Of a stretch of 12,216 nt of DNA, positions 309 through 12,216 are shown piece after piece. Positions within the stretch are counted from its first letter, which is position 1, and every line of letters starts with the position of its first letter. Source of the DNA: Octopus sinensis (Eukaryota); the NCBI RefSeq assembly GCF_006345805.1, contig NW_021826668.1:1-12216 (forward strand), given 5' to 3'. Under the pieces are notes generated by a model that had not been told where the DNA came from, searched no databases, and was given only the letters and a program-made list of their open reading frames with translations. Position numbers and translations under genes: made by a program.

Positions 309-526
309 CAGTGGTCAAATTAGTCTTGGGACACTTGTTTATTTTTAATAAAATTTTATTTTCTATAAATACTGTTTTCATTTAATTTTTTCCAAAAGTA
401 TAAAAGTGCACCTAGTTTTTTTACATCATAGATCATTAAAAAAATTAAAAAAGAAGTTTAATTTATAGAAAATTTTTTCATTTAGATCCAAGGCTGGAAT
501 ATCAAAGGCCAATTAGTCTTGGGACA
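309..526 (+). repeat. Tc1 left long imperfect inverted repeat with outer and inner direct repeats
   Basis: AATTAGTCTTGGGACA occurs at 318-333 and 511-526. The sequence between them aligns imperfectly with the reverse complement of 3851-4072. Confidence 0.88.
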
Positions 527-658
527 GTTTGGTATTTATTTACTTTTTGATAAAATAATTGGATTTATCTGCATATCGATCAATGAAATTATACTAATTT
601 CGAATACATTCGTATATTTAAACGATTATTAACATCATTTTCAATTAATATTTTGTAC

Positions 659-1089
659 ATGCCTAAGCGAAAGGAACATTCAGAAGACATAAAAAATCTT
701 ATACTTCTGGAATATAATGCAGGAAAATCAATCCGAAAAATTTCCGAAAGTGTTCATATTCCAAAGAGTACAGTATGGAACATTATCAATAAATGGAAAT
801 TATTAAAAACTACCAAAAATAAGCCAAGATCAGGACAACCGAAAAAAATATCATCTCGATCAATTTCCATAATTAGACGAAAAGTGCTTAATAATCCGAG
901 ATTGTCTCGTAAACAACTCTCTACTTACTTGGGCGAGGTAGGATCGCCAGTATGCTCACAGACTGTTACAAATGCCCTAAGAATAGATGGGTTCCATAAA
1001 TATCGTCCACGTAAAGTTCCGCTGCTTACTAAAAAAAACGTCCATGCACGGTTAAAATATGCCAAAAAAATTTACTCAAGACGACGACT
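659..1089 (+). pseudogene. Tc1 transposase, N-terminal paired-like HTH DNA-binding region
   Basis: ATG at 659: MPKRKEHSEDIKNLI...IPKSTVWNIINKW...RSGQPKKIS...RKVPLLTKKNVHARLKYAKK. One extra A in the run at 1064-1070 gives NLLKTTT up to the Helitron junction. The ORF track's extension beyond 1089 is read-through into the Helitron. Confidence 0.93.
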
Positions 1090-1156
1090 TCTTAATAATA
1101 AAATTGTAATGGTTGTGTCTTCTGTCTGTGTGTGCACACCAACTTCAAATTGGCAA

Positions 1157-1757
1157 TACGATGTCCTCGACTTACATGATGAGGTCCTTAAAACCTTCCC
1201 CCCAAAAAAAATTAAAAAAAAATTTTCTGCATTTTGGTTAAAATGAACAACTACGATGTCCTCGACTTACATGATGAGGTCCTTAAAACCTTCCCCCCAA
1301 AAAAAAATTAAAAAAAAATTTTCTGCATTTTGGTTAAAATGAACACTACGATGTCCTCGACTTACATGATGAGGTCCTTAAACCTTCCCCCCAAAAAAAA
1401 ATTAAAAAAAATTTTCTGCATTTTGGTTAAAATGAACAACTACGATGTCCTCGACTTCATGATGAGGTCCTTAAAACCTTCCCCCCAAAAAAATTAAAAA
1501 AAATTTTCTGCATTTTGGTTAAAATGAACAACTACGATGTCCTCGACTTACATGATGAGGTCCTTAAAACCTTCCCCCCAAAAAAAAATTAAAAAAAATT
1601 TTCTGCATTTTGGTTAAAATGAACAACTACGATGTCCTCGACTTACATGATGATGTCCTTAAACCTTCCCCCCAAAAAAATTAAAAAAAAAAATTTTCTG
1701 CATTTGATTAAAATGAACAACGTTAATGTCCTCGACATTCATGATGAGGTCCATTAA
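1157..1757. repeat. Minisatellite of ~95-bp units (six full units plus one degenerate partial unit) inside the Helitron
   Basis: The unit TACGATGTCCTCGACTTACATGATGAGGTCCTTAAAACCTTCCCCCC(A)nTT(A)nTTTTCTGCATTTTGGTTAAAATGAACAAC starts at 1157, 1252, 1347, 1441, 1533, 1628 and (degenerate) ~1722. Confidence 0.97.
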
Positions 1758-2092
1758 AAATCTCACGTATTAAGAATATCCTTGATGAAAACGACAGCGA
1801 GAATATTAAAAATGATGAACTCCCAATTATTCGCGATAAAGAAATTCAATTCATCTTATGATTTTCTCTTTAAAATTAAATGCATATACCATTCAAAATA
1901 AAACCTATTATCATATTTGACTTGACAGAATGTGCAATTACAGATTGCACGACCTTGAATAGAGTGTGCAATTAACAGATTTTGAAAAACACTTTGATAG
2001 TTGAAACCACATTAGCAAAATCATTAACACAATTTACCACCAATTGACAGCGCAATCAGAAGAATTTGCGTAAAAATATTAACTATTTAGTT

Positions 2093-2327
2093 AAGTTTTT
2101 CGTAAAGATAGAATTTTTTTCGGTATGCCTCTTTTCCTAAACTTTTTTATTATTCAAAAATAATTTTTTCAATAGATAACTGAAGGAGGGAAGACGACCT
2201 TAAGAAAAGAAGTTTTTCGTAAAGATAGAATTATTTTCTGTATGCCTCTTTTTTTCTAATATTTTTTATTATTCAAAAATAATTTTTAAATAGATAACCG
2301 AAGGAGGAAAAACGAAGCTGAAGAAAA
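2093..2327. repeat. Two-copy ~117-bp tandem duplication inside the Helitron
   Basis: AAGTTTTTCGTAAAGATAGAATT...TATGCCTCTTTT...TTATTCAAAAATAATTTTT...TAGATAAC(T/C)GAAGGAGG starts at 2093 and again at 2210. Confidence 0.92.
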
Positions 2328-2680
2328 AACGGTCAGCTTAAGGTAATTAAATCTTTTTTGTGTGTCGCTTTTTTGGCTGCTGCTACTCTGCCTGCCGCAT
2401 CTCCCGCCTCCGCATCTCCGGCTGCCCCATCTCCGCCAGTGGTTTGTCTAATCAAGGTCACTAAGCTAAATCTCCGGACTATAAAGGCTCTTAAGCATTA
2501 TCTTAACTGGCTGTTAAAAAAATTAGACAGGTTGTTGCCGTGGCGGCAGAGATTTTTTTTGTTTAACTTTTTTACAAATTTTTAAAGTTTTTTTTGTTTT
2601 TTCATTTCTTTTGTTTTTAAATTATTTATTTTATTTGTTTTTTTTTTATTTTTTTTGTTATTTTCTACAAATTCAACCGG

Positions 2681-3143
2681 ATTGAATTTTTAAACTCCTT
2701 AGATCCCTCTGGAATGCCGAATCATCTTTTAAAGTTAAAGATAGGCGTTCCAGTGGTTTTATTACGAAATCTTGCGCCACCTAAATTATGCAACGGAACG
2801 AGGTTAGTTATCAAAAATTTGATGGCTAACGTAATAGAGGCGACGATATTCACAGGTAAGTATAGAGGTGAGGATGTTTATATTCCACGAATTCCGATAA
2901 TTTCTGATGAATTACCATTTAGATTTAAAAGGCTGCAATTTCATTTGAGGATGAGTTTTGCAATGACAATAAACAAGGCCCAGGGACAGTCATTAAAGGT
3001 AGTTGGGTTATTTTTAGAGAGTGAGTGCTTTTAACATGGACAGCTGTATGTGGGATGCTCGAGGGTAGGCAGAAGAGAAATTTATTCATATATGCAAAGG
3101 AAGGACGGACGACAAACATCGTTATCAACAGGCGATAGAATAG
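2681..3143 (+). pseudogene. Helitron RepHel PIF1-family helicase C-terminal fragment
   Basis: [31 protein letters not shown]...LCNGTRL...IPRIP...FKRLQF...[14 protein letters not shown]...CF*HGQLYVGCSRV. There is a premature TAA at 3032-3034. Later frameshifts recover NLFIYAKEGRTTNIVYQQAIE*. Confidence 0.95.
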
Positions 3144-3255
3144 GGTTACATTAAACCAGGTAGTTTTATACATCTACATAAACTTATAATTGTTTGATGA
3201 AACAGGCCCTCCGCAGGAGCTAGGTCGCGGTGAGCGAAGCGAGCTGCCGAGCTAG

Positions 3256-3844
3256 TTCTAATATAATATTATTTGGTCAGATGAGACAAAGATAGAAATT
3301 TTTGGGCAGAATTATACAAGCTACGTGTGGCGTAAATCAAAAGATGAATATCGCCCAAAAAATACCATACCAACAGTTAAACATGGCGGGGGCAGTATTA
3401 TGCTATGGGGGTGTTTTTCTTCTTGGGGAGTTGGGGAACTTCATGTAATAGACGGAATATTGAATGCTTCTATATACTGTGATATTTTGGAAAAAAATAT
3501 TTTTTCGTCAATTGAGAAATGTGGTATTGTGGGAAATTGGACATTTCAACAGGACAATGATCCGAAACATACTGCAAAAAAAACTCAAAAATGGCTAGAA
3601 GAACATTTAATTAATATCCTTGAATGGCCAAGTCAGTCCCCAGATCTAAATCCGATTGAAAATCTTTGGAAGAATTAAAAGCCAAAGTATGGGCACATAA
3701 TCCAAAAAATATCACGGAATTAAAATCATTTGTTTCGAAGAATGGAATAAAATTCCCGTAGAAACTTGTAAAAAGCTTGTGAGCAATTATAAAAATCGTT
3801 TAAATGCAGTTTTGGAGAATAAAGGATACTTTACAAAGTATTAA
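3256..3844 (+). pseudogene. Tc1 transposase, DD34E catalytic domain
   Basis: F*YNIIWSDETK...TVKHGGGSIMLWGCF...FQQDNDPKH...WPSQSPDLNPIENLW, with 34 residues between D and E. Single-base frameshifts at 3670-3671 and 3729-3731 restore KELKAKV...EEWNKIP...NKGYFTKY*, with TAA at 3842-3844. Confidence 0.95.
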
Positions 3845-3850
3845 GGGATT

Positions 3851-4072
3851 TGTCCCATGACTAATTAGCATTTGATTTTATGACTGTTTGTTTAAAATGT
3901 CAAAATTTTCTTAAAATAAATGGATTTTGGATTATTTTTAAATGTTTTATTATGTAGAAAACTCTGTTTCATTTTTTAGCCTTTAGAAAAAATTAAAGAA
4001 AAACAGCCATGTTAAAGAAAATAAAAATTTAATTAAAAATAACAAGTGTCCCAAGACTAATTTGACCCACTG
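3851..4072 (-). repeat. Tc1 right long imperfect inverted repeat with inner and outer direct repeats
   Basis: TGTCCCATGACTAATT at 3851-3866 (one mismatch to the left DR) and TGTCCCAAGACTAATT at 4047-4062. Confidence 0.88.
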
Positions 4073-4182: not shown

Positions 4183-5148
4183 CAGGGGTCGGCAGGATTT
4201 TTGTCTTCGCGGGCCAAAATTTTATTTTTGTATGCGATCCGGGCCAAACGAGAAAAAATCCTTATCGGTCACAAAAATAAGGCAACGCTTGCACATTGCG
4301 ATCTTTCTTTATCAAGTTTTTTTTACAACTTTCTTACGAAATAAAAATTTATCAGTTAAAAATGATTATAAAGAAGTGAATTTATTTTACTCATTAATCT
4401 GACTAGTTGCTAAACGTAATATATCGTTAAGATGTGAATCGGTAATCCTCGTTCTCAGACAATTTTTTACATTATTCATTTTAGAGAATAACTGTTCACA
4501 TAAAAATGTGCTTCCAAATATACAAGCCATTTTCTTTTATAAATTCTCCGTCTGAAAATGGTTTCATTCGTTTCGCAATTATCTTTGAAATTTCGTAACT
4601 TGTACGTGTGATATCATCTTTTTCACAACTCAAATTATAAAAAAATGTTGTTTGCTTTTGGTAATTTGTTCGAGTCTCTTAATTTCCTTTATGCGAGATT
4701 CTCCTGTAAACTTGCTGAATTTTTCGTAATGTCGAGTTTCATAATGTCGTTGATGTTATAAATTTTTTTGACAGCAACTTTTTCGAAACATATTAAGCAT
4801 ATAGGTTTTCCATAATCCTCAATAAGAAATATTCATGAGTCCAATCTGGATTAAACGTACGGGTTTGAAGATCTTTAGTTCTTTTCGAACAATTCTGCAT
4901 TCAAATTCACCACACAAAATTATTAACACGTTTATAAATTTATTTAATTTTTAATAATAGATAAAATGTATGTATAAATCTATATTACTAAAAGCCTAGT
5001 ACTTTACTAAATTTGCCCGCGGGCCATGTTAGTTGGAAAAATTTGTCGGCGGGCCAATTTCCCTTAGTATTATAAAATTTGTTCGCGGGCCATTTTTAAA
5101 TCTTCCTGGGCCTAATTTTGCCCGCGGGCCGCGATTTGCCGACCCCTG
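4183..5148 (-). mobile_element. Internally deleted hAT transposon, Buster/SPIN/Charlie-like (966 bp)
   Basis: Perfect 12-bp TIR CAGGGGTCGGCA at 4183-4194 and 5137-5148. Perfect 8-bp TSD CTTTAGAG at 4175-4182 and 5149-5156, with the central TA typical of the Buster subfamily. GGGCC subterminal motifs occur at both ends. Confidence 0.96.
4387..4900 (-). pseudogene. hAT transposase remnant: N-terminal BED-like zinc finger joined to the C-terminal dimerisation motif
   Basis: ATG at 4900. With three 1-nt homopolymer corrections it reads MQNCSKRTKDLQTRTFNPDWTHEYFFIEDYGKPICLICFEKVAVKKIYNIKRHYETRH...SYEISKIIAKRMKPFSDGEFIKE. It then jumps near 4530 to MACIFGSTFLCEQLFSKMNNVKNCLRTRITDSHLNDILRLATSQINE*, with TAA at 4387-4389. 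Confidence 0.9.
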
Positions 5149-6229: not shown

Positions 6230-6352
6230 TGGTCAATTTGAGAATTGGCCACTTTCAATGGAAATTCGAATTTTTCTTAAGATAATTTTATAAGTGTGGT
6301 CAATTTCAGAGGTGCCCAATTTCAGAGGTGGCCAATTTCAGAGGAGTCACTG
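6230..6352 (-). repeat. pogo terminal and subterminal 16-bp direct repeats (probable transposase-binding sites)
   Basis: TGG(T/C)CAATTTCAGAGG-like units at 6297-6312, 6313-6328 and 6329-6344, plus two degenerate units at 6230-6245 and 6246-6261. Confidence 0.85.
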
Positions 6353-6533: not shown

Positions 6534-7535
6534 TTATCTTTTTAAAAATTGTTTAAATGCGGCTGAAGTTGCCTCATGAACATCACTTGGTCCCTTATCT
6601 TTCAACAAATCCGAATAGTTTATATACTCCAAAGTCTCCGAATTAATAAAAAATTCCTTTTTATACTAAACAATTTATCACTAAAATATACTTTTTTTCA
6701 TTTCACTAGGATTTATATAAGTAAATGTTTCTGTAAAAGACTCTGTCGGTTTATTAGCGATCAATTCCTGGGTCTTTGTGCTTGTCCCGGTTATCCAAAC
6801 TTGCTGGGTTTTGTGGTATCTCCAATTCCTACGAAATCTAAACAACTTTGACAGCTCTAAACTACAATTCAATGCTTGTATTCACATGGAGTTCATTTTG
6901 AGTGTTCAAATAAAACATAAGTGCCAAAGTTGTGTCACTGTGTCTTCCCAACTTCAACGGCGGGACCTATTTTTAACAAAAAAATGTCAAAATACCATTT
7001 CTTTAATTTTTTTGCTGTAGTAACATGGTTGGAGAATCATTTCTAACATACAAATATATAAATACCAGTTCCCTCGACAAAACAGTCCCTGGATGAATCA
7101 TTCCAATCCAAATTACTTAAATAATTAATTTTAAATACTTGTAGGGGATTGAATCGAAATCTTCTTTATCAAACCCTTGAAATTGTTCAGTTCCTGTTTC
7201 TTGAGATTCTTCGACTAATTTTTTTAAATTTGCAAATTTTTCGAATGTATTTTGACTGATGGATGGCTTATTTGGGTTAGAGCTTTTCATTTTTTCGTCT
7301 TTGGTGTATTGGTCGTGAAATTGGAGCTGTTGGTCATGAAATAAATAGTTTTTTACTTGTAGGAGTTCTTTCTAGTTCGTCTCGTAATTCATGGAACCAT
7401 CGGCTATTATTAGTTAATGTTTATAGTACCTTTGGTTTCTTTTTCCTTTAATATTCTTGGTTTTTTGGTCAGTATTCTCACTGTTCGTAGAAGGCTATTA
7501 TTTTAGGCTATATAATGACCTACATGATTTGACAT
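6534..7535 (-). CDS. NOT2: NOT2/CNOT2-like CCR4-NOT subunit (NOT2/3/5 domain), 9 exons and 8 micro-introns, ~261 aa
   Basis: Exons: 7535-7524, 7494-7430, 7403-7357, 7326-7139, 7115-7066, 7042-6996, 6966-6866, 6837-6692, 6665-6534. The spliced C-terminal half ILQPCYYSKKIKEMVPPLKLGRHSDTTLALMFYLNTQNELHVNTSIELFRRNWRYHKTQQVWIT...MKKYKKEF matches the NOT-box pattern I recall for CNOT2 (IKLGRY...ELFNRDWRYHK...VWIT...KEF). One A must be removed from each of the runs at 7369-7371 and 6692-6698. The 5' exons are less certain. Confidence 0.82.
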
Positions 7536-7783: not shown

Positions 7784-8319
7784 CTTCCATTTTGGTCAAA
7801 GAAGTTACTTGATCCGGAATCGATAAAGAAGAAACTGGAAATGACTCACACTAAGGGAAATCGTGTAAATGAAGTACAAATGTCTGGCATAAAGGCCACT
7901 TGGTCGGGGAAGTTACTTGATCCAGAATCTGCCACGCATGCTGGTATCAGCACACAGAAGGGAACTCATCTAATTGACCACAAATCCCCAAAGAAATACG
8001 ATATTAGTGTTCAAACTGACGACATTGTCAAAAACGGATCGAATCCGGAACTCAGACTGCTTCATTAACACGGGAATTTAAACGGACCCATGCCCAGAAC
8101 AAACCCGCCGCCCCGAAGACGAGAGCAGTGAAGAAAACTGCGGTAGCAAATTCTGGAGTTCAGCTGCCAAGTCCCGAAGCCCGGCTGGAGGACGATGGGA
8201 CGCCTCTAGAGCCGGCTGAAATGGGTAGCAAACGGAAAGCAGGCAGACCCCCTTTACCGAAAAAGGTGGCGCTCCCACGGGAGGTCAGCCACCCATGTCG
8301 GAAGGATGCCTCGTTCTGA
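7784..8319 (+). pseudogene. Probable LINE ORF1 remnant
   Basis: A higher-GC coding-like stretch directly upstream of the APE domain, with a duplicated peptide WS(K/G)KLLDPES and a basic patch SKRKAGRPPLPKK. The assignment rests on position only; I recognised no domain. Confidence 0.45.
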
Positions 8320-10057
8320 CAATTCTAAATGCCCGCTCACTCACGAGACGGGTAACGGAGCTGAGGTTTCTGCTAGCCTCAGCGAAAACGGACGTATTGA
8401 TTGTCAACGAGACAACTGAAGGGACCAAATAAAATTGAATTTGAAGGCTAAAAATCCCTTAATATCCCATGGAAAACTGACGCAGTAGCAGGAACCTCTG
8501 TCTTCTATAATGAAAGTATGAGAGTCAAAAACCGGTGACCTGAACGCAAAAAATGTTGTCTATAGGTGTGAAGCAACCAATACGGACGGAGAGGGTACTT
8601 GAGAGTTTGTCTCAAACTCTTTTTTCGATATGGACGTCCGAAGCTAAACCACTATCCGGATAGAGGCAGACCGGATCGCCTTGAATTTTTCTCTCCTCGG
8701 CGTCTATTACTCCACTCTGTGATCGTCCGACAATCGAGGTAAATGTAGGAAGTGATCACATCCCGCAATCATTGAGACTAAGGACGAAAATAAATCTGAC
8801 AGAAGACGTGTTTATTGGATATACTCTGTCGAATGTGGATTGGCATCTATTTGAGTACTCTATGCGCTTGGCACTTAATACTACCGTGCTCCGTCCTCTT
8901 CGGACCATGGAGGATATAGACGACCTCGAGAATCGCACGATGAGGTGTTCCAACGTGGGAGTCAGAAATCAGTTAAAAGTTGAAATCGACCACCTCAAGA
9001 CGATGATAGTTGAAATTGGGAAAAAGAAAATAGAAAAATCATGGAGGAAGGAATGCCGAATGCTGGATAAGAGAAATCCAAAGTTTTGGAAGGCGTATCA
9101 GCGCCTGAACAACGCGGAAGGGAAAGGCGACAACATTGTGTTAAAGGGGCAAGTTGGAAAGTATATCCCCTTCGATCTTGTCCCGGATGAACTAAGAAGG
9201 CAGCTGGGTAGAACCCAAGAAGTCGAACCTGAATCAATTATTCCACAAAAGACCTTTGAGAAAGTCACTTCAAGGCTAGAATCTCTAAATCTTGTGAGTG
9301 GACCTCTATGCGAGGCTATTACCGAAAAAGAGACACAAGAAGTGATAGCAGGGCTGAAAAACAAGGCCCCTGGATTCGACTACATACCTGTGTTACTTCT
9401 TAAGAAAGCTCCGAGGATCCTCCTACGGGCTCTAACTATGCTTTTCGACGCTAGTTTTACCCTTGGTTATCTTCCGCCCACCTGGAAGTGCACAGTCGTT
9501 CGTATGATCCCGAAACCTGGGAAAACAAGTCTCCTAGCAGAAAACTACAGCCCTATAAGCCTGATCTGCGCTTTTTCGAAAATTATGGAGAAAATAATTT
9601 TGAAAGACTCTCATTACATGTTGAAAAGAATAATCTGCTTTCCGTTGTACAATGGGGTTTTCGTCCTGGGAAATCCACGGGAAACTGCTTGAAGGTTCTA
9701 GAAAGGGAACTTTCTTGGGCAATACGTAATAAATCTTGCACGACTGCTGTGTGCTTGGATTTGTCGAAGGCTTTTGACTGCGTCTGGCACCTGTGCAGGC
9801 TGTCGAAGCGGAGGAGCGAAAATGCTCGTGTCTTTGAAGTTGGGGACTTGAAACTTTCGCAGAACCTCCAATACCTTGGGGTTACAATAGATGCCAGAGG
9901 ATCCTATGGAAATCATATCGATACCCAAAGGAAGAGAGCCGTTAAAATCCTAGGAAGCCTGACCAGATTTCATCTCAAAGAAAAATTGGATAACTCATAT
10001 GAATCCTGCGTCCATAAAATACAGTCCGTCCTGGAGAAGGCGCGGTTGCTTTTTTAG
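8304..10057 (+). pseudogene. LINE ORF2 (apurinic endonuclease plus reverse transcriptase), degenerate
   Basis: APE motifs: LTILNARSL...DVLIVNET and HYPDRGRPDRLEFF...GSDHIP. RT motifs: KAPGFDYIP, WKCTVVRMIPKPGK...YSPISL, QWGFRPGKST and LDLSKAFDCVWH. It then jumps straight to ...QYLGVTID, so the GVPQG/YADD core is missing. Confidence 0.92.
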
Positions 10058-10364: not shown

Positions 10365-11295
10365 CCAAGCCCTTTTTGAACTGTAATATGAAACAGAGCA
10401 TTGATAGTCGTAATTTTGGAAACATCTTGGCATCTTTGAGTTTCCAATTAAAACAGGATTTCGTGTGCATATGCGATGAGTAGTTATGTGATGGATCTCT
10501 CAAAAAGCAAAAATCTTTATTACCTGGGAGCAACCATCAACTGTCGTGGCTCGTACGCAGATCACATAGCAAATCAGAAAAAGAGGAGTGTGAGGATCCT
10601 CAAAAGCTTAACCAGGTTCCATCTGGATCCGGAAACGTACATCTACGTATAAAAAACGTGTGTGGAGCCAGTCCTCACATATGGCTACGAGGGCTGGTAC
10701 GGTACGGAGGAGAGTGACTACCTGATCGAACAGTTGGAAAAGACAAGACGTTTCGCTATGAAATTGGCTTACGGAGTACAACTTGACGGAAGGTTAAAAG
10801 ACTCACAAGAATCCTCTGTGCCCACGATCCGGATGGTCTTGGAGAATTGTCGTCAAACATGACTAGTATTGGGGATACGCATGGAAAGAGACACTTCGGT
10901 GCCTTGTTTTTATCTCCCCGCCGATGATTTCTTCCTTGTTTTTCTTTTTCATTTCGCTCAATAAACACTATTCTATTCTATTCTAAAACAGGATTTAATT
11001 TGTGATTATTTGCACACAACATTACAGATACCTGATCCTTAAAATTTTTATATCGTCCAAACTGAGTCTTGCAAATACTTTTAGGTGGAATTAGTTTGTA
11101 GAAAATCCTTGTTTTATCAAGGTTATAAATTTCATCGATAGTATAGGACTTGAATAAATTTTGAAATTCATTTAAAAATCTTTCGATGTCAACTTTTTTA
11201 TCAGTTTTCATCTGCACATGCAATTTTCTCAGACGGAATTCATGTCTTTTTTTAAACTTGAACAAGAATCCGGCAGAGTTCTTAAAATTATCGAG
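10365..11295 (-). pseudogene. Second, diverged pogo-like transposase fragment, interrupted by a LINE
   Basis: LDNFKNSAGFLFKFKKRHEF...IYNLDKTRIFYKLIP...YKNFKDQVSVMLCANNHKLNPVL runs from 11295 to 10984. It continues after the LINE as IGNSKMPRCFQNYDYQCSVSYYSSKRAW down to 10365. It is collinear with copy 1. Confidence 0.88.
10462..10983 (+). mobile_element. 5'-truncated LINE (522 bp), related to the 7784-10201 element
   Basis: 13-bp TSD TAAAACAGGATTT at 10449-10461 and 10984-10996. It encodes YLGATINCRGSYADHI...SLTRFHL...CVEPVLTYG, similar to YLGVTIDARGSYGNHI...SLTRFHL in LINE copy 1. AATAAA near 10961-10966 is followed by a (CTATT)3 tail at 10968-10982. Confidence 0.92.
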
Positions 11296-11545: not shown

Positions 11546-11634
11546 TGACCCACAAGATTAGACATCAAATAAAATACAAATCAATAAAAGTTATTCTAAG
11601 TTTCGTTGGAAAATGTGTTCATAATCACGTTAGC

Positions 11635-11841
11635 TCAATAATTCTCGTCTCCTGGAATTTTTCTCCTCTTGGGAGAGCTTTCCACCAAGGCACCATCAGC
11701 ACTTTCATTCTCCGAACACAAGATTTTCCCGTTTGCTTCATCCGAAGGGTCCTCGCAAGATTGATTTGCCACTTCAGCCAAATGACTGGTTGCCGTAATG
11801 AATTCCTCTTGAGGCGTATGGATTCCATGCCTATGCTCCAC
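11635..11841 (-). other. Orphan coding-like 3' fragment (acidic, ends SSPKRRKIPGDENY*)
   Basis: An open 68-codon frame with a PKRRK NLS-like motif and TGA at 11635-11637, followed by an AT-rich stretch. It is fused abruptly to the RLE element. I do not recognise a family. Confidence 0.35.
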
Positions 11842-11842
11842 T

Positions 11843-12216
11843 CATAGATAAAGATATCTGGCTTATTGAACTGAACTTGTGTATCGGTCAATATTGGTGT
11901 ATCTACTCTTATCTCGACATTTCGAGTCGATAAACTAGACTGTACTGAATGAGACTTTAGTTTCCCAGTTTTCTTTATTCCAAACTGTCTGCATACGTGC
12001 AAATGGATGCATCTCACAACCTCATTGTGCCTTTTCACATAGTCACTGTTTAGCATTCTGTTGCACCGTGTAGCCATGTGGTCTACTGTCTTCTTAGCTT
12101 TTTTGCAATGATCACACTGCGCACCACGCGCAGAAGAAAAAAACAAATTTCTATCTTGCAAGAGGCAATACAAAGCTTCACTCCTTGGTGTATTGTTCCC
12201 TTTGTACAGCCACATT
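11843..12216 (-). mobile_element. C-terminal part of an RLE-type non-LTR retrotransposon ORF (R2/R4/NeSL/Hero-like), truncated within the endonuclease
   Basis: CCHC knuckle CDHCKKAKKTVDHMATRC, followed by RHNEVVRCIH and NKPDIFIY. Homology stops before the second catalytic acidic residue and lysine of the PD-(D/E)xK motif. The element continues beyond the window. Confidence 0.87.

What the first reader, a model, noticed from the sequence alone, without database searches (positions are those of the whole stretch)
6534..7535. Hidden host gene split by eight 23-30 nt introns
Introns are 7495-7523 (29 nt), 7404-7429 (26), 7327-7356 (30), 7116-7138 (23), 7043-7065 (23), 6967-6995 (29), 6838-6865 (28) and 6666-6691 (26). 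All start GTA and end AG, are very AT-rich and have no real polypyrimidine tract. Splicing intron 7 gives IELFRRNWRYHK, in register with the NOT box. High intron density (8 in 1 kb) with near-minimal length is rare. Micro-introns with the standard code point away from most ciliates, and this density points away from typical intron-poor microsporidia. Reduced animal parasites such as myxozoans or dicyemids are candidates; this is inference only. Standard gene finders would miss or fragment such genes.
Basis: partly seen in the sequence, partly recalled or inferred. Interest (0 to 1): 0.8.

Follow-up and report, generated by a model that had tools for sequence, protein, structure and literature searches.

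The report
CNOT2-like gene with tiny introns

Summary
The core observation holds. On the minus strand at 6534-7290 there is a CNOT2-type NOT-box gene: Pfam NOT2_3_5_C E=4.6e-12, 46.6 bits against a cut-off of 27, and human CNOT2 structures at E=1e-11.

- **Introns 4-7:** 7116-7138, 7043-7065, 6967-6995 and 6838-6865 are well supported. They form the unique minimum-removal set of GT..AG introns that opens the frame, and homology runs across the junctions without gaps.
- **Intron 8 (6666-6691):** it has homologous exons on both sides but is one base out of frame. As the sequence stands, the product ends at ...EMKKI*.
- **Introns 1-3:** these are unsupported. Spliced as listed, the CDS is 788 nt and stops after 57 codons. 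Nine other 5' models are equally open.
- **Frame problems:** both abut poly-A runs. This could be a homopolymer assembly error or a real frameshift; I cannot tell which.
- **Motif strength:** GTA..AG of 23-30 nt occurs 4-5 times per kb by chance here, so homology carries the case, not the motif.
- **Source organism:** sub-30-nt GTA..AG introns in AT-rich animal genomes are published for myxobolid myxozoans (Henneguya salminicola: GC 29%, median intron 27 bp) and Dicyema. A fish-type (Sleeping-Beauty-like) Tc1 element next door weakly favours a fish parasite. The organism could not be identified.

This is a further example of a known kind, of modest interest.

The parts
7139..7290 (-). First secure coding exon (152 nt). 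Candidate start codon ATG at 7290-7288 (MKSSNPNK...). The same frame is open upstream to 7372 without another ATG.
   Evidence: With this start the protein is colinear with the crystallised human CNOT2 C-terminal fragment: query residue 79 aligns to chain residue 83.
7116..7138 (-).
   Evidence: Part of the unique minimum-removal open model. If retained it gives an in-frame stop (...SIPYKYLKLII*). This junction lies upstream of the aligned homology, so it rests on frame and parsimony only.
7066..7115 (-). Exon, 50 nt (NLDWNDSSRDCFVEGT).
   Evidence: The Pfam match starts inside it, at residue 67.
7043..7065 (-). Intron 5, 23 nt, GTATTTATATATTTGTATGTTAG, phase 1.
   Evidence: The junction (residue E79) lies inside the Pfam NOT2_3_5_C match at 67-176. 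If retained it gives a stop.
6996..7042 (-). Exon, 47 nt (EMILQPCYYSKKIKEM).
6967..6995 (-). Intron 6, 29 nt, GTATTTTGACATTTTTTTGTTAAAAATAG, phase 0.
   Evidence: The junction M83|V84 is ungapped in the alignment to human CNOT2. If retained: KEMVF*.
6866..6966 (-). Exon, 101 nt (VPPLKLGRHSDTTLALMFYLNTQNELHVNTSIEL), the first half of the NOT box.
6838..6865 (-). Intron 7, 28 nt, GTAGTTTAGAGCTGTCAAAGTTGTTTAG, phase 2.
   Evidence: Splicing joins TT|A into Leu and gives IELFRRNWRYHK. This aligns without a gap to human VELFNRDWRYHK.
6692..6837 (-). Exon, 146 nt (FRRNWRYHKTQQVWITGTSTKTQELIANKPTESFTETFTYINPSEMKK + 1 nt). It ends in an A7 run at 6692-6698.
6666..6691 (-). Intron 8, 26 nt, GTATATTTTAGTGATAAATTGTTTAG. 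Probably real, but it leaves the last exon one base out of frame.
   Evidence: Homology continues in the last exon: kkeffinsetle against AKEFHLEYDKLE, ungapped if 27 nt are removed. No canonical intron restores the frame. The literal product is ...EMKKI*.
6534..6665 (-). Last exon, 132 nt (YKKEFFINSETLEYINYSDLLKDKGPSDVHEATSAAFKQFLKR, stop TAA at 6534-6536). It is reached only if one base is dropped at the preceding junction.
   Evidence: It extends the Pfam match from profile position 98 to 125 of 126. It is a 43-codon open frame, with a chance probability of about 0.05 at the local stop frequency.
7327..7535 (-). Unsupported as coding structure; possibly 5' UTR or upstream exons.
Evidence: As listed the frame breaks. 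There are nine alternative open 5' models. Only GC content hints at exon-like sequence: 34-43% at 7357-7494 against 16% upstream of 7535.

Best explanation
The locus is a protein-coding gene for a short CNOT2/Not2-type subunit of the CCR4-NOT deadenylase complex. It would be about 208 aa if it starts at ATG 7290. That corresponds to the C-terminal CNOT1-docking plus NOT-box module of human CNOT2.

The gene sits on the minus strand in a roughly 1.3-kb gap between a pogo-like transposon and a LINE-like element. At least four and probably five spliceosomal micro-introns of 23-29 nt interrupt it. Their only recognisable signals are GTA at the 5' end and AG (mostly TAG) at the 3' end. They are AT-rich and lack a polypyrimidine tract.

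Shown here:
- the NOT-box homology
- the exon order
- the junctions of introns 4-7
- in-frame stops in every intron if it is retained.

Inferred:
- The introns are removed by a conventional U2-type spliceosome, as argued for myxobolids in PMC13644364.
- The product pairs with a CNOT3-type partner on CNOT1, from established knowledge of the NOT module.
- The source is a reduced animal parasite. A myxobolid myxozoan is somewhat more likely than a dicyemid.
- The one-base frame defect at junction 8 is more likely a homopolymer error in the assembly than a real lesion, at roughly 60:40.
For: - **Family:** Pfam NOT2_3_5_C at E=4.6e-12, 46.6 bits against a cut-off of 27, covering profile positions 18-125 of 126. 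Human CNOT2 chains 5fu6_B, 4c0d_B and 4c0f_A match at E about 1e-11, and yeast Not2 (4by6_B) at 1e-7. No CNOT3/Not5 chain appears even at E<=10.
- **Introns 4-7:** they are the unique minimum-removal open model. The alignment to human CNOT2 is ungapped across junctions 6, 7 and 8.
- **Retention:** every retained intron gives an in-frame stop within a few codons.
- **Composition:** exons are 28-42% GC, introns 4-8 are 9-36% and flanking intergenic DNA is 16-22%.
- **Control:** long open paths built with such introns occur only here and in transposon or LINE frames.
- **Genetic code:** all 10 Gln codons in the model are CAA/CAG, and a TAA stop follows shortly after the homology ends.
- **Published parallels:** H. 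salminicola has GC 29.13%, a median intron of 27 bp, a 5' splice site reduced to GTa, and a PacBio assembly polished with Racon (PMC13644364). Dicyema has a median intron of 27 bp and 4.9 introns per gene (PMC6543705).
- **Neighbouring transposon:** the adjacent Tc1 element matches Sleeping Beauty SB100X at E=7e-48. Its named nearest relatives are almost all teleost fishes.
Against: - As the sequence stands the reading frame is broken at junction 8. The literal product lacks the last quarter of the NOT box.
- No transcript evidence is available.
- No close homologue was found, so intron positions and selection could not be compared.
- The N-terminus is undefined.
- The protein is less than half the length of human CNOT2.
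- The source organism was not identified. The fish-type Tc1 is only 55-66% identical to fish copies and also has frog and amphipod relatives, so it is weak evidence for a fish parasite.
Confidence: 0.8

Rival explanations
1. The locus is a decaying or truncated CNOT2 copy (an unprocessed pseudogene or gene fragment) stranded among transposons. On this reading the one-base frameshift before the last exon is real, and the missing N-terminal half reflects disruption by the neighbouring insertions.
For: - The frame breaks at junction 8 and no canonical intron rescues it.
- A second frame conflict appears if the upstream exons are used.
- The gene lies within a few hundred bases of pogo-like sequence on one side and LINE-like sequence on the other.
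- The neighbouring transposon copies are visibly degraded.
- The protein is only about 208 aa.
Against: - There are 166 codons without a stop across five exons in roughly 30%-GC DNA.
- All five GTA/AG splice-site pairs are intact.
- The last exon is still a 43-codon open frame with residual homology.
- Both frame problems sit at poly-A runs, the usual site of long-read consensus errors.
- The 208-aa length matches the functional human C-terminal module that was crystallised.
Confidence: 0.3
2. The source is a protist with short introns, such as a ciliate germline (Paramecium-like, or Stentor-like with the standard code), a nucleomorph or a microsporidian, rather than an animal parasite.
For: - The DNA is AT-rich and has GTA..TAG introns of about 25 nt, which resembles Paramecium (my own knowledge).
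- PMC13644364 lists ciliates and microsporidia as other carriers of introns under 30 nt.
Against: - None of the 10 Gln codons is TAA or TAG, and the gene ends on TAA shortly after the homology stops.
- Stentor introns are 15-16 nt. Nucleomorph introns are 18-21 nt and those genomes are compact and free of transposons (my own knowledge).
- The window is packed with animal-type elements: SB-like Tc1, pogo DDE_1, a Pif1/Helitron-like fragment and a LINE reverse transcriptase.
- The NOT box scores higher against human CNOT2 (48 bits) than against yeast Not2 (35 bits).
Confidence: 0.07
3. The NOT-box resemblance and the 'introns' are a chance construct. GTA...AG pairs are common in AT-rich DNA, and an open frame can be stitched together from them.
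For: - GTA..AG of 23-30 nt occurs 4-5 times per kb on either strand.
- Thousands to millions of open GT..AG models exist across the same 600 nt.
- Nine different open models exist for the 5' end.
Against: - The Pfam score is 19 bits above the curated cut-off.
- Human CNOT2 matches at E=1e-11 over 100 residues spanning three junctions without gaps at them.
- The parsimony solution is unique and coincides with the homology-based one.
- No comparable open path exists in non-transposon DNA elsewhere in the window.
Confidence: 0.02

Closest known systems
Ultra-short spliceosomal introns of myxobolid myxozoans (Henneguya salminicola, Thelohanellus kitauei, Myxobolus rasmusseni; Hadjez et al. 2026, PMC13644364)
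   Same: - Intron lengths of 23-29 nt, against medians of 22-27 bp.
- A 5' signal reduced to GTA and a 3' AG, with no polypyrimidine tract.
- Several short introns clustered in one gene, lying between conserved exons.
- Local GC of about 30%, against 29.13% for H. salminicola.
- Myxobolid genomes are rich in transposons, especially DNA transposons (PMC8855578).
- A fish-type Tc1 element next door fits a fish parasite.
   Different: - The source organism was not identified, so membership of that clade is untested.
- There is no transcript support here.
- One junction is out of frame.
Micro-introns of dicyemids (Dicyema japonicum and Dicyema sp.; PMC6736024, PMC6543705; Ogino et al. 2010 as cited there)
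   Same: - Median intron of 27 bp, with two thirds under 30 bp.
- About 5-6 introns per gene.
- GTa/AG-only signals.
- A repeat-rich genome (48.9%) with many LINE copies.
   Different: - D. japonicum GC is 36.7%, higher than the roughly 30% of the non-transposon parts of this window.
- Dicyemids live in cephalopods, which makes a fish-type Tc1 less expected.
- Neither point is decisive.
Human CNOT2 / yeast Not2 NOT-box module (PDB 4c0d, 5fu6, 4by6)
   Same: - The C-terminal NOT box has the conserved KLGR...LFY...ELF.R.WRYHK...VWIT core.
- The length and colinearity match the crystallised CNOT2 fragment.
- The match is to CNOT2-type chains rather than CNOT3-type chains.
   Different: - It has about 208 aa against 540 in human CNOT2, with no long N-terminal region.
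- It is highly divergent, and the NAR/connector region shows no detectable similarity.
- The C-terminal strands are out of frame in the sequence as given.
Paramecium-type 20-34-nt introns
   Same: Length, AT-richness and GTA...TAG ends (my own knowledge).
   Different: - The standard code is used here.
- The window is full of animal-type transposons.
- It is not a ciliate macronuclear context.

Membership tests
CNOT2/Not2 (Pfam NOT2_3_5_C, PF04153) | NOT-box domain scoring above the curated Pfam cut-off | tested here: met
   46.6 bits against 27, E=4.6e-12, profile positions 18-125 of 126. The literal truncated product still scores 45.0 bits.
CNOT2/Not2 (Pfam NOT2_3_5_C, PF04153) | Closer to the CNOT2/Not2 branch than to the CNOT3/Not5 branch of the NOT-box family | tested here: met
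   PDB hits are CNOT2 (E=1e-11) and Not2 (E=1e-7) only. No CNOT3/Not5 chain appears at E<=10, although they are present in the same entries. No phylogeny was possible.
CNOT2/Not2 (Pfam NOT2_3_5_C, PF04153) | Uninterrupted reading frame through the whole NOT box | tested here: not met
   The exons sum to 628 nt, which is 3n+1. Junction 8 shifts the frame and gives ...EMKKI*, and no canonical intron rescues it. This may be a sequence error.
CNOT2/Not2 (Pfam NOT2_3_5_C, PF04153) | N-terminal CNOT1-anchor region and heterodimerisation with CNOT3 | not testable with these tools
   About 66 residues precede the domain, similar in length to the human fragment, but they show no detectable similarity.
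Animal micro-introns (myxobolid/dicyemid type) | Length under about 30 nt with a GTa 5' end and an AG 3' end | tested here: met
   Lengths are 23, 23, 29, 28 and 26 nt, all GTA...AG, four of the five ending TAG.
Animal micro-introns (myxobolid/dicyemid type) | Introns sit between exons whose protein homology continues across the junction | tested here: met
   Junctions 5-8 lie inside the Pfam or PDB alignments with no gap at the junction. Junction 4 rests on frame and parsimony only.
Animal micro-introns (myxobolid/dicyemid type) | Removal from transcripts | not testable with these tools
   No RNA data are available.
Animal micro-introns (myxobolid/dicyemid type) | Source genome belongs to Myxobolidae or Dicyemida | tested here: inconclusive
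   - Four window ORFs are not on record in the assembly index.
- No related protein or locus was found.
- Only circumstantial support exists: GC and intron size, plus fish-type Tc1 relatives.
Ciliate (Paramecium-type) short introns | TAA/TAG read as Gln, with TGA the only stop | tested here: not met
   0 of 10 Gln codons is TAA or TAG, and the ORF ends at TAA shortly after the homology stops.
Processed pseudogene | Absence of introns | tested here: not met
   Five intron-like interruptions carrying in-frame stops are present.

The most novel reading that the evidence does not exclude
The window could come from an animal (or other eukaryote) lineage in which sub-30-nt introns have not yet been described. 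That would be a third independent origin of micro-introns in Metazoa, beyond myxobolids and dicyemids. In that case the fish-type Tc1 element could mark horizontal transfer between a vertebrate host and this parasite.
Probability: 0.1. Interest if true: 0.6.

Novelty: new member of a known kind. Interest (0 to 1): 0.3.

Why it matters
It is a clean worked example of a problem already recognised in the literature. In genomes of reduced animal parasites, genes are cut into 50-150-nt exons by introns of 23-29 nt whose only signals are GTA and AG.

In AT-rich DNA that motif occurs by chance 4-5 times per kb. An open reading frame alone therefore cannot define the gene model; homology or transcripts are needed.

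The case also shows how a single homopolymer error, or a real frameshift, can hide the end of a conserved domain. It adds no new biology beyond what was published for myxobolids in 2026 and dicyemids in 2010-2019, unless the source turns out to be a different lineage.

Tried and rejected
The CDS is 788 nt and stops early, so the model is rejected as written.

**Rescuing junction 8.** I looked for any GT-AG, GC-AG or AT-AC intron that restores the frame. No GT-AG or GC-AG intron does. The only two solutions are AT-AC introns of 54 and 72 nt that delete conserved residues, so I rejected them.

**Resolving the 5' end.** Exhaustive enumeration gave nine open models and nothing to choose between them.

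**Finding relatives:**
- The word-indexed search of 5.8 billion proteins with the 208-aa product found nothing.
I did not try to get round this.
- The same tool run with exon 8 alone, an exact window translation, returned only two repeat proteins that are not CNOT2.
- A metagenome scan with 103 aa of the NOT-box region of the spliced product found nothing. An exact 38-mer from the gene also found nothing.

**Identifying the source.**
- Four window ORFs are not on record in the assembly index.
- The reverse-transcriptase ORF found only two relatives, at 38-43% identity.

**Other negative or uninformative results:**
- Rfam and tRNA scans of the window found nothing.
- NCBIfam gave no meaningful hit.
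- Structure prediction was not attempted, because the spliced sequence is not an accepted input.

Full report
**What is in the sequence.** The feature lies on the minus strand. For the five introns measured, 4-8, AT content is 64-91%. Spliced exactly as listed, however, the CDS from ATG 7535 to TAA 6534 is 788 nt, which is not a multiple of three. It runs into a stop after 57 codons (...RRKNEKL*), well before the NOT box.

**The part that holds.** A three-frame translation and re-splicing give a consistent 3' model. The minus-strand exons are 7290-7139, 7115-7066, 7042-6996, 6966-6866, 6837-6692 and 6665-6534.

The product starting at ATG 7290 hits Pfam NOT2_3_5_C at E=4.6e-12. The score is 46.6 bits against a curated cut-off of 27, covering profile positions 18-125 of 126. 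It matches human CNOT2 structures (5fu6_B, 4c0d_B, 4c0f_A) at about 1e-11 and yeast Not2 at 1e-7. No CNOT3/Not5 chain appears even at E<=10, so it is a CNOT2-type NOT box.

The alignment to human CNOT2 covers residues 79-178 and is ungapped at junctions 6, 7 and 8. Junction 5 lies inside the Pfam match. Each intron, if retained, puts a stop in frame within a few codons. The exons are 28-42% GC, introns 4-8 are 9-36%, and the flanking DNA is 16-22%.

**Is it more than chance?** The motif alone is weak. GTA..AG pairs spaced 23-30 nt apart occur 4.1-5.4 times per kb across the window on either strand, against 11 per kb in the gene. An open frame alone is also weak. Between 7290 and 6693 there are 8,804 open models using GT..AG introns of 15-40 nt, and 4.3 million using 15-100 nt.

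The model that removes the least sequence (103 nt) is unique, and it is exactly introns 4-7. With GTA..AG introns of 20-32 nt only two open models exist. As a control I asked where in the window a 598-nt open path can be built with such introns. There are only five places: this locus, the Tc1 reading frame, and the LINE region on both strands. Together with the homology, introns 4-7 are secure.

**The two frame problems.**
- **Intron 8.** It has homologous exons on both sides. The last exon reads YKKEFFINSETLEY..., aligns to human AKEFHLEYDKLE, and extends the Pfam match from profile position 98 to 125. But the six exons sum to 628 nt, which is 3n+1. As the sequence stands the product ends ...PSEMKKI*. 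No GT-AG or GC-AG intron restores the frame, and only two implausible AT-AC solutions exist. Removing 27 nt rather than 26 gives a gapless alignment to human CNOT2. The surplus base abuts an A7 run at 6692-6698.
- **Intron 3.** It puts the upstream exons out of frame with the NOT-box frame. Nine other 5' models are equally open. The simplest model starts at ATG 7290 and needs no upstream coding exon.

Both conflicts therefore sit at poly-A runs. That is typical of consensus errors in long-read assemblies. The one published myxobolid long-read assembly was polished with Racon only. Real mutations also favour such runs, and a similar one-base shift at an A-run is seen in the neighbouring, clearly degraded LINE. 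I put error against real frameshift at about 60:40. This is inference. The exon-like GC of 7357-7494 (34-43%, against 16% upstream of 7535) hints that the transcript extends to about 7500, either as UTR or as coding sequence.

**Surroundings.** The gene is the only non-transposon coding sequence I could recognise in the window.
- **Tc1-like element, 313-4067.** It has terminal inverted repeats of 56 nt at 89% match, HTH domains (653-1246) and a DDE_3 fragment (3325-3678). A 95-nt tandem array at 1157-1759 and a Pif1-2B (Helitron-like) fragment at 2714-3034 interrupt it.
- **pogo-like copy.** A DDE_1 copy runs on the minus strand from 5029 to about 6160. That ends a few hundred bases from the CNOT2 stop codon.
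- **LINE-like element.** A block of 43-51% GC with reverse-transcriptase similarity runs from about 7841 to 10057.
- **Further fragments.** There is a second pogo fragment (10978-11265, minus strand) and an ORF that I read by eye as a LINE C-terminal fragment (11625-12215, minus strand). Neither gave a Pfam hit.

The 'hidden host gene' description is fair.

**Which organism?** I could not identify it.
- Four window ORFs are not in the assembly index.
- The spliced protein has no relative in the word-indexed collection.
- Two metagenome scans found nothing.

The circumstantial evidence is as follows.
- The code is standard: 0 of 10 Gln codons is TAA or TAG, and the stop is TAA.
- The transposons are of animal type.
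- The NOT box is closer to the human protein than to the yeast one.
- The DDE_3 fragment matches Sleeping Beauty SB100X at E=7e-48, with about 60% identity by my count from the alignment.
- The named nearest relatives of that fragment are almost all teleosts, including Oncorhynchus, Salmo, Esox and Sander, at 55-66% identity. A frog and an amphipod also appear.

This fits a fish-associated parasite better than a cephalopod parasite, but only weakly.

**Comparison with what is known.** Introns under 30 nt in animals are published.
- **Dicyemids.** Dicyema sp. has a median intron of 27 bp, two thirds under 30 bp, and 4.9 introns per gene (PMC6543705). D. japonicum has a mean intron of 38 bp, 6.2 introns per gene, GC 36.7% and 48.9% repeats (PMC6736024).
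- **Myxobolid myxozoans.** H. salminicola has a median intron of 27 bp and GC 29.13%. [quoted passage not shown] Splice signals are reduced to GTa and AG, with weak A residues as a putative branch point and a conventional U2 machinery (PMC13644364).
- **Transposon load.** Myxobolid genomes can be rich in transposons, especially DNA transposons (PMC8855578).

The introns here match that description in length, signals, clustering and genomic background. Its claim of rarity is overstated for those lineages.

**Mechanism.**
- **Shown:** a CNOT2-type NOT-box coding sequence is interrupted by micro-introns that must be removed for the domain to be read.
- **Inferred from established knowledge of the CCR4-NOT NOT module (structures 4c0d and 4by6):** the product would pair through its NOT box with a CNOT3/Not5-type partner and dock on the CNOT1 C-terminal domain. 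The 208-aa length corresponds to the human fragment that is sufficient for this.
- **Inferred from PMC13644364:** splicing is done by a conventional U2-type spliceosome using minimal signals.

**Verdict.** This is a real gene with real micro-introns: four firm, one probable and three unsupported. It has one unresolved single-base frame defect and an undefined 5' end. It is a new example of a known kind and of modest interest. It would become interesting only if the source proves to lie outside Myxobolidae and Dicyemida.

Noticed in passing
window 313-4067 (+), especially 3325-3678 and 653-1246: A Tc1-like transposon with 56-nt terminal inverted repeats (313-368 / 4012-4067, 89% match). Its DDE fragment matches Sleeping Beauty SB100X at E=7e-48 (about 60% identity by my count). 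Its named nearest relatives are almost all teleost fishes at 55-66% identity. This could mark old horizontal transfer between a fish host and a parasite, or simply a widespread Tc1 clade.
   Followed up: partly
window 1157-1759: A 95-nt tandem array (6.4 copies, 93% match) sits inside the Tc1 element, directly after the HTH-domain ORF. It is followed by a 119-nt repeat at 2101-2374.
   Followed up: no
window 2714-3034 (+): An ORF with a Pif1 helicase 2B domain (E=6.7e-13). It looks like a Helitron-type helicase fragment nested inside the Tc1 element.
   Followed up: no
window 7841-10057 (+): A LINE-like block with 43-51% GC in a roughly 30% GC background. It carries reverse-transcriptase similarity (RVT_1, and 43% identity to an ENA protein). 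A one-base frame shift at an A-run near 9600 splits the reverse transcriptase into two overlapping ORFs.
   Followed up: partly
window 5029 to about 6160 (-) and 10978-11265 (-): Two pogo/Tigger-like transposase remnants. The first has a DDE_1 domain (E=5e-23). Its internal deletion and CENP-B/HTH-like N-terminal part I read by eye, and the second remnant gave no Pfam hit. The first ends a few hundred bases from the CNOT2 stop codon.
   Followed up: partly
window 6301-6344: A 16-nt tandem repeat (CAATTTCAGAGGTGCC, 2.8 copies, 96% match) lies between the pogo-like element and the 3' end of the CNOT2 gene.
   Followed up: no
window about 4700-4900 (-): A translated stretch (…KPICLICFEKVAVKKIYNI…) resembles a zinc-finger motif of hAT/BED-type transposases. 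I saw this by eye only and did not test it.
   Followed up: no
window 11625-12215 (-): A 196-aa ORF with a Cys/His motif that I read by eye as the C-terminal part of a second LINE-type element. It gave no Pfam hit.
   Followed up: no
window 6692-6698 and 7290-7295 (-): Both reading-frame conflicts of the CNOT2 models abut poly-A runs (A7 and A6). In both cases one A fewer would restore the frame. This suggests systematic homopolymer over-calling in the assembly, but it is unproven.
   Followed up: partly
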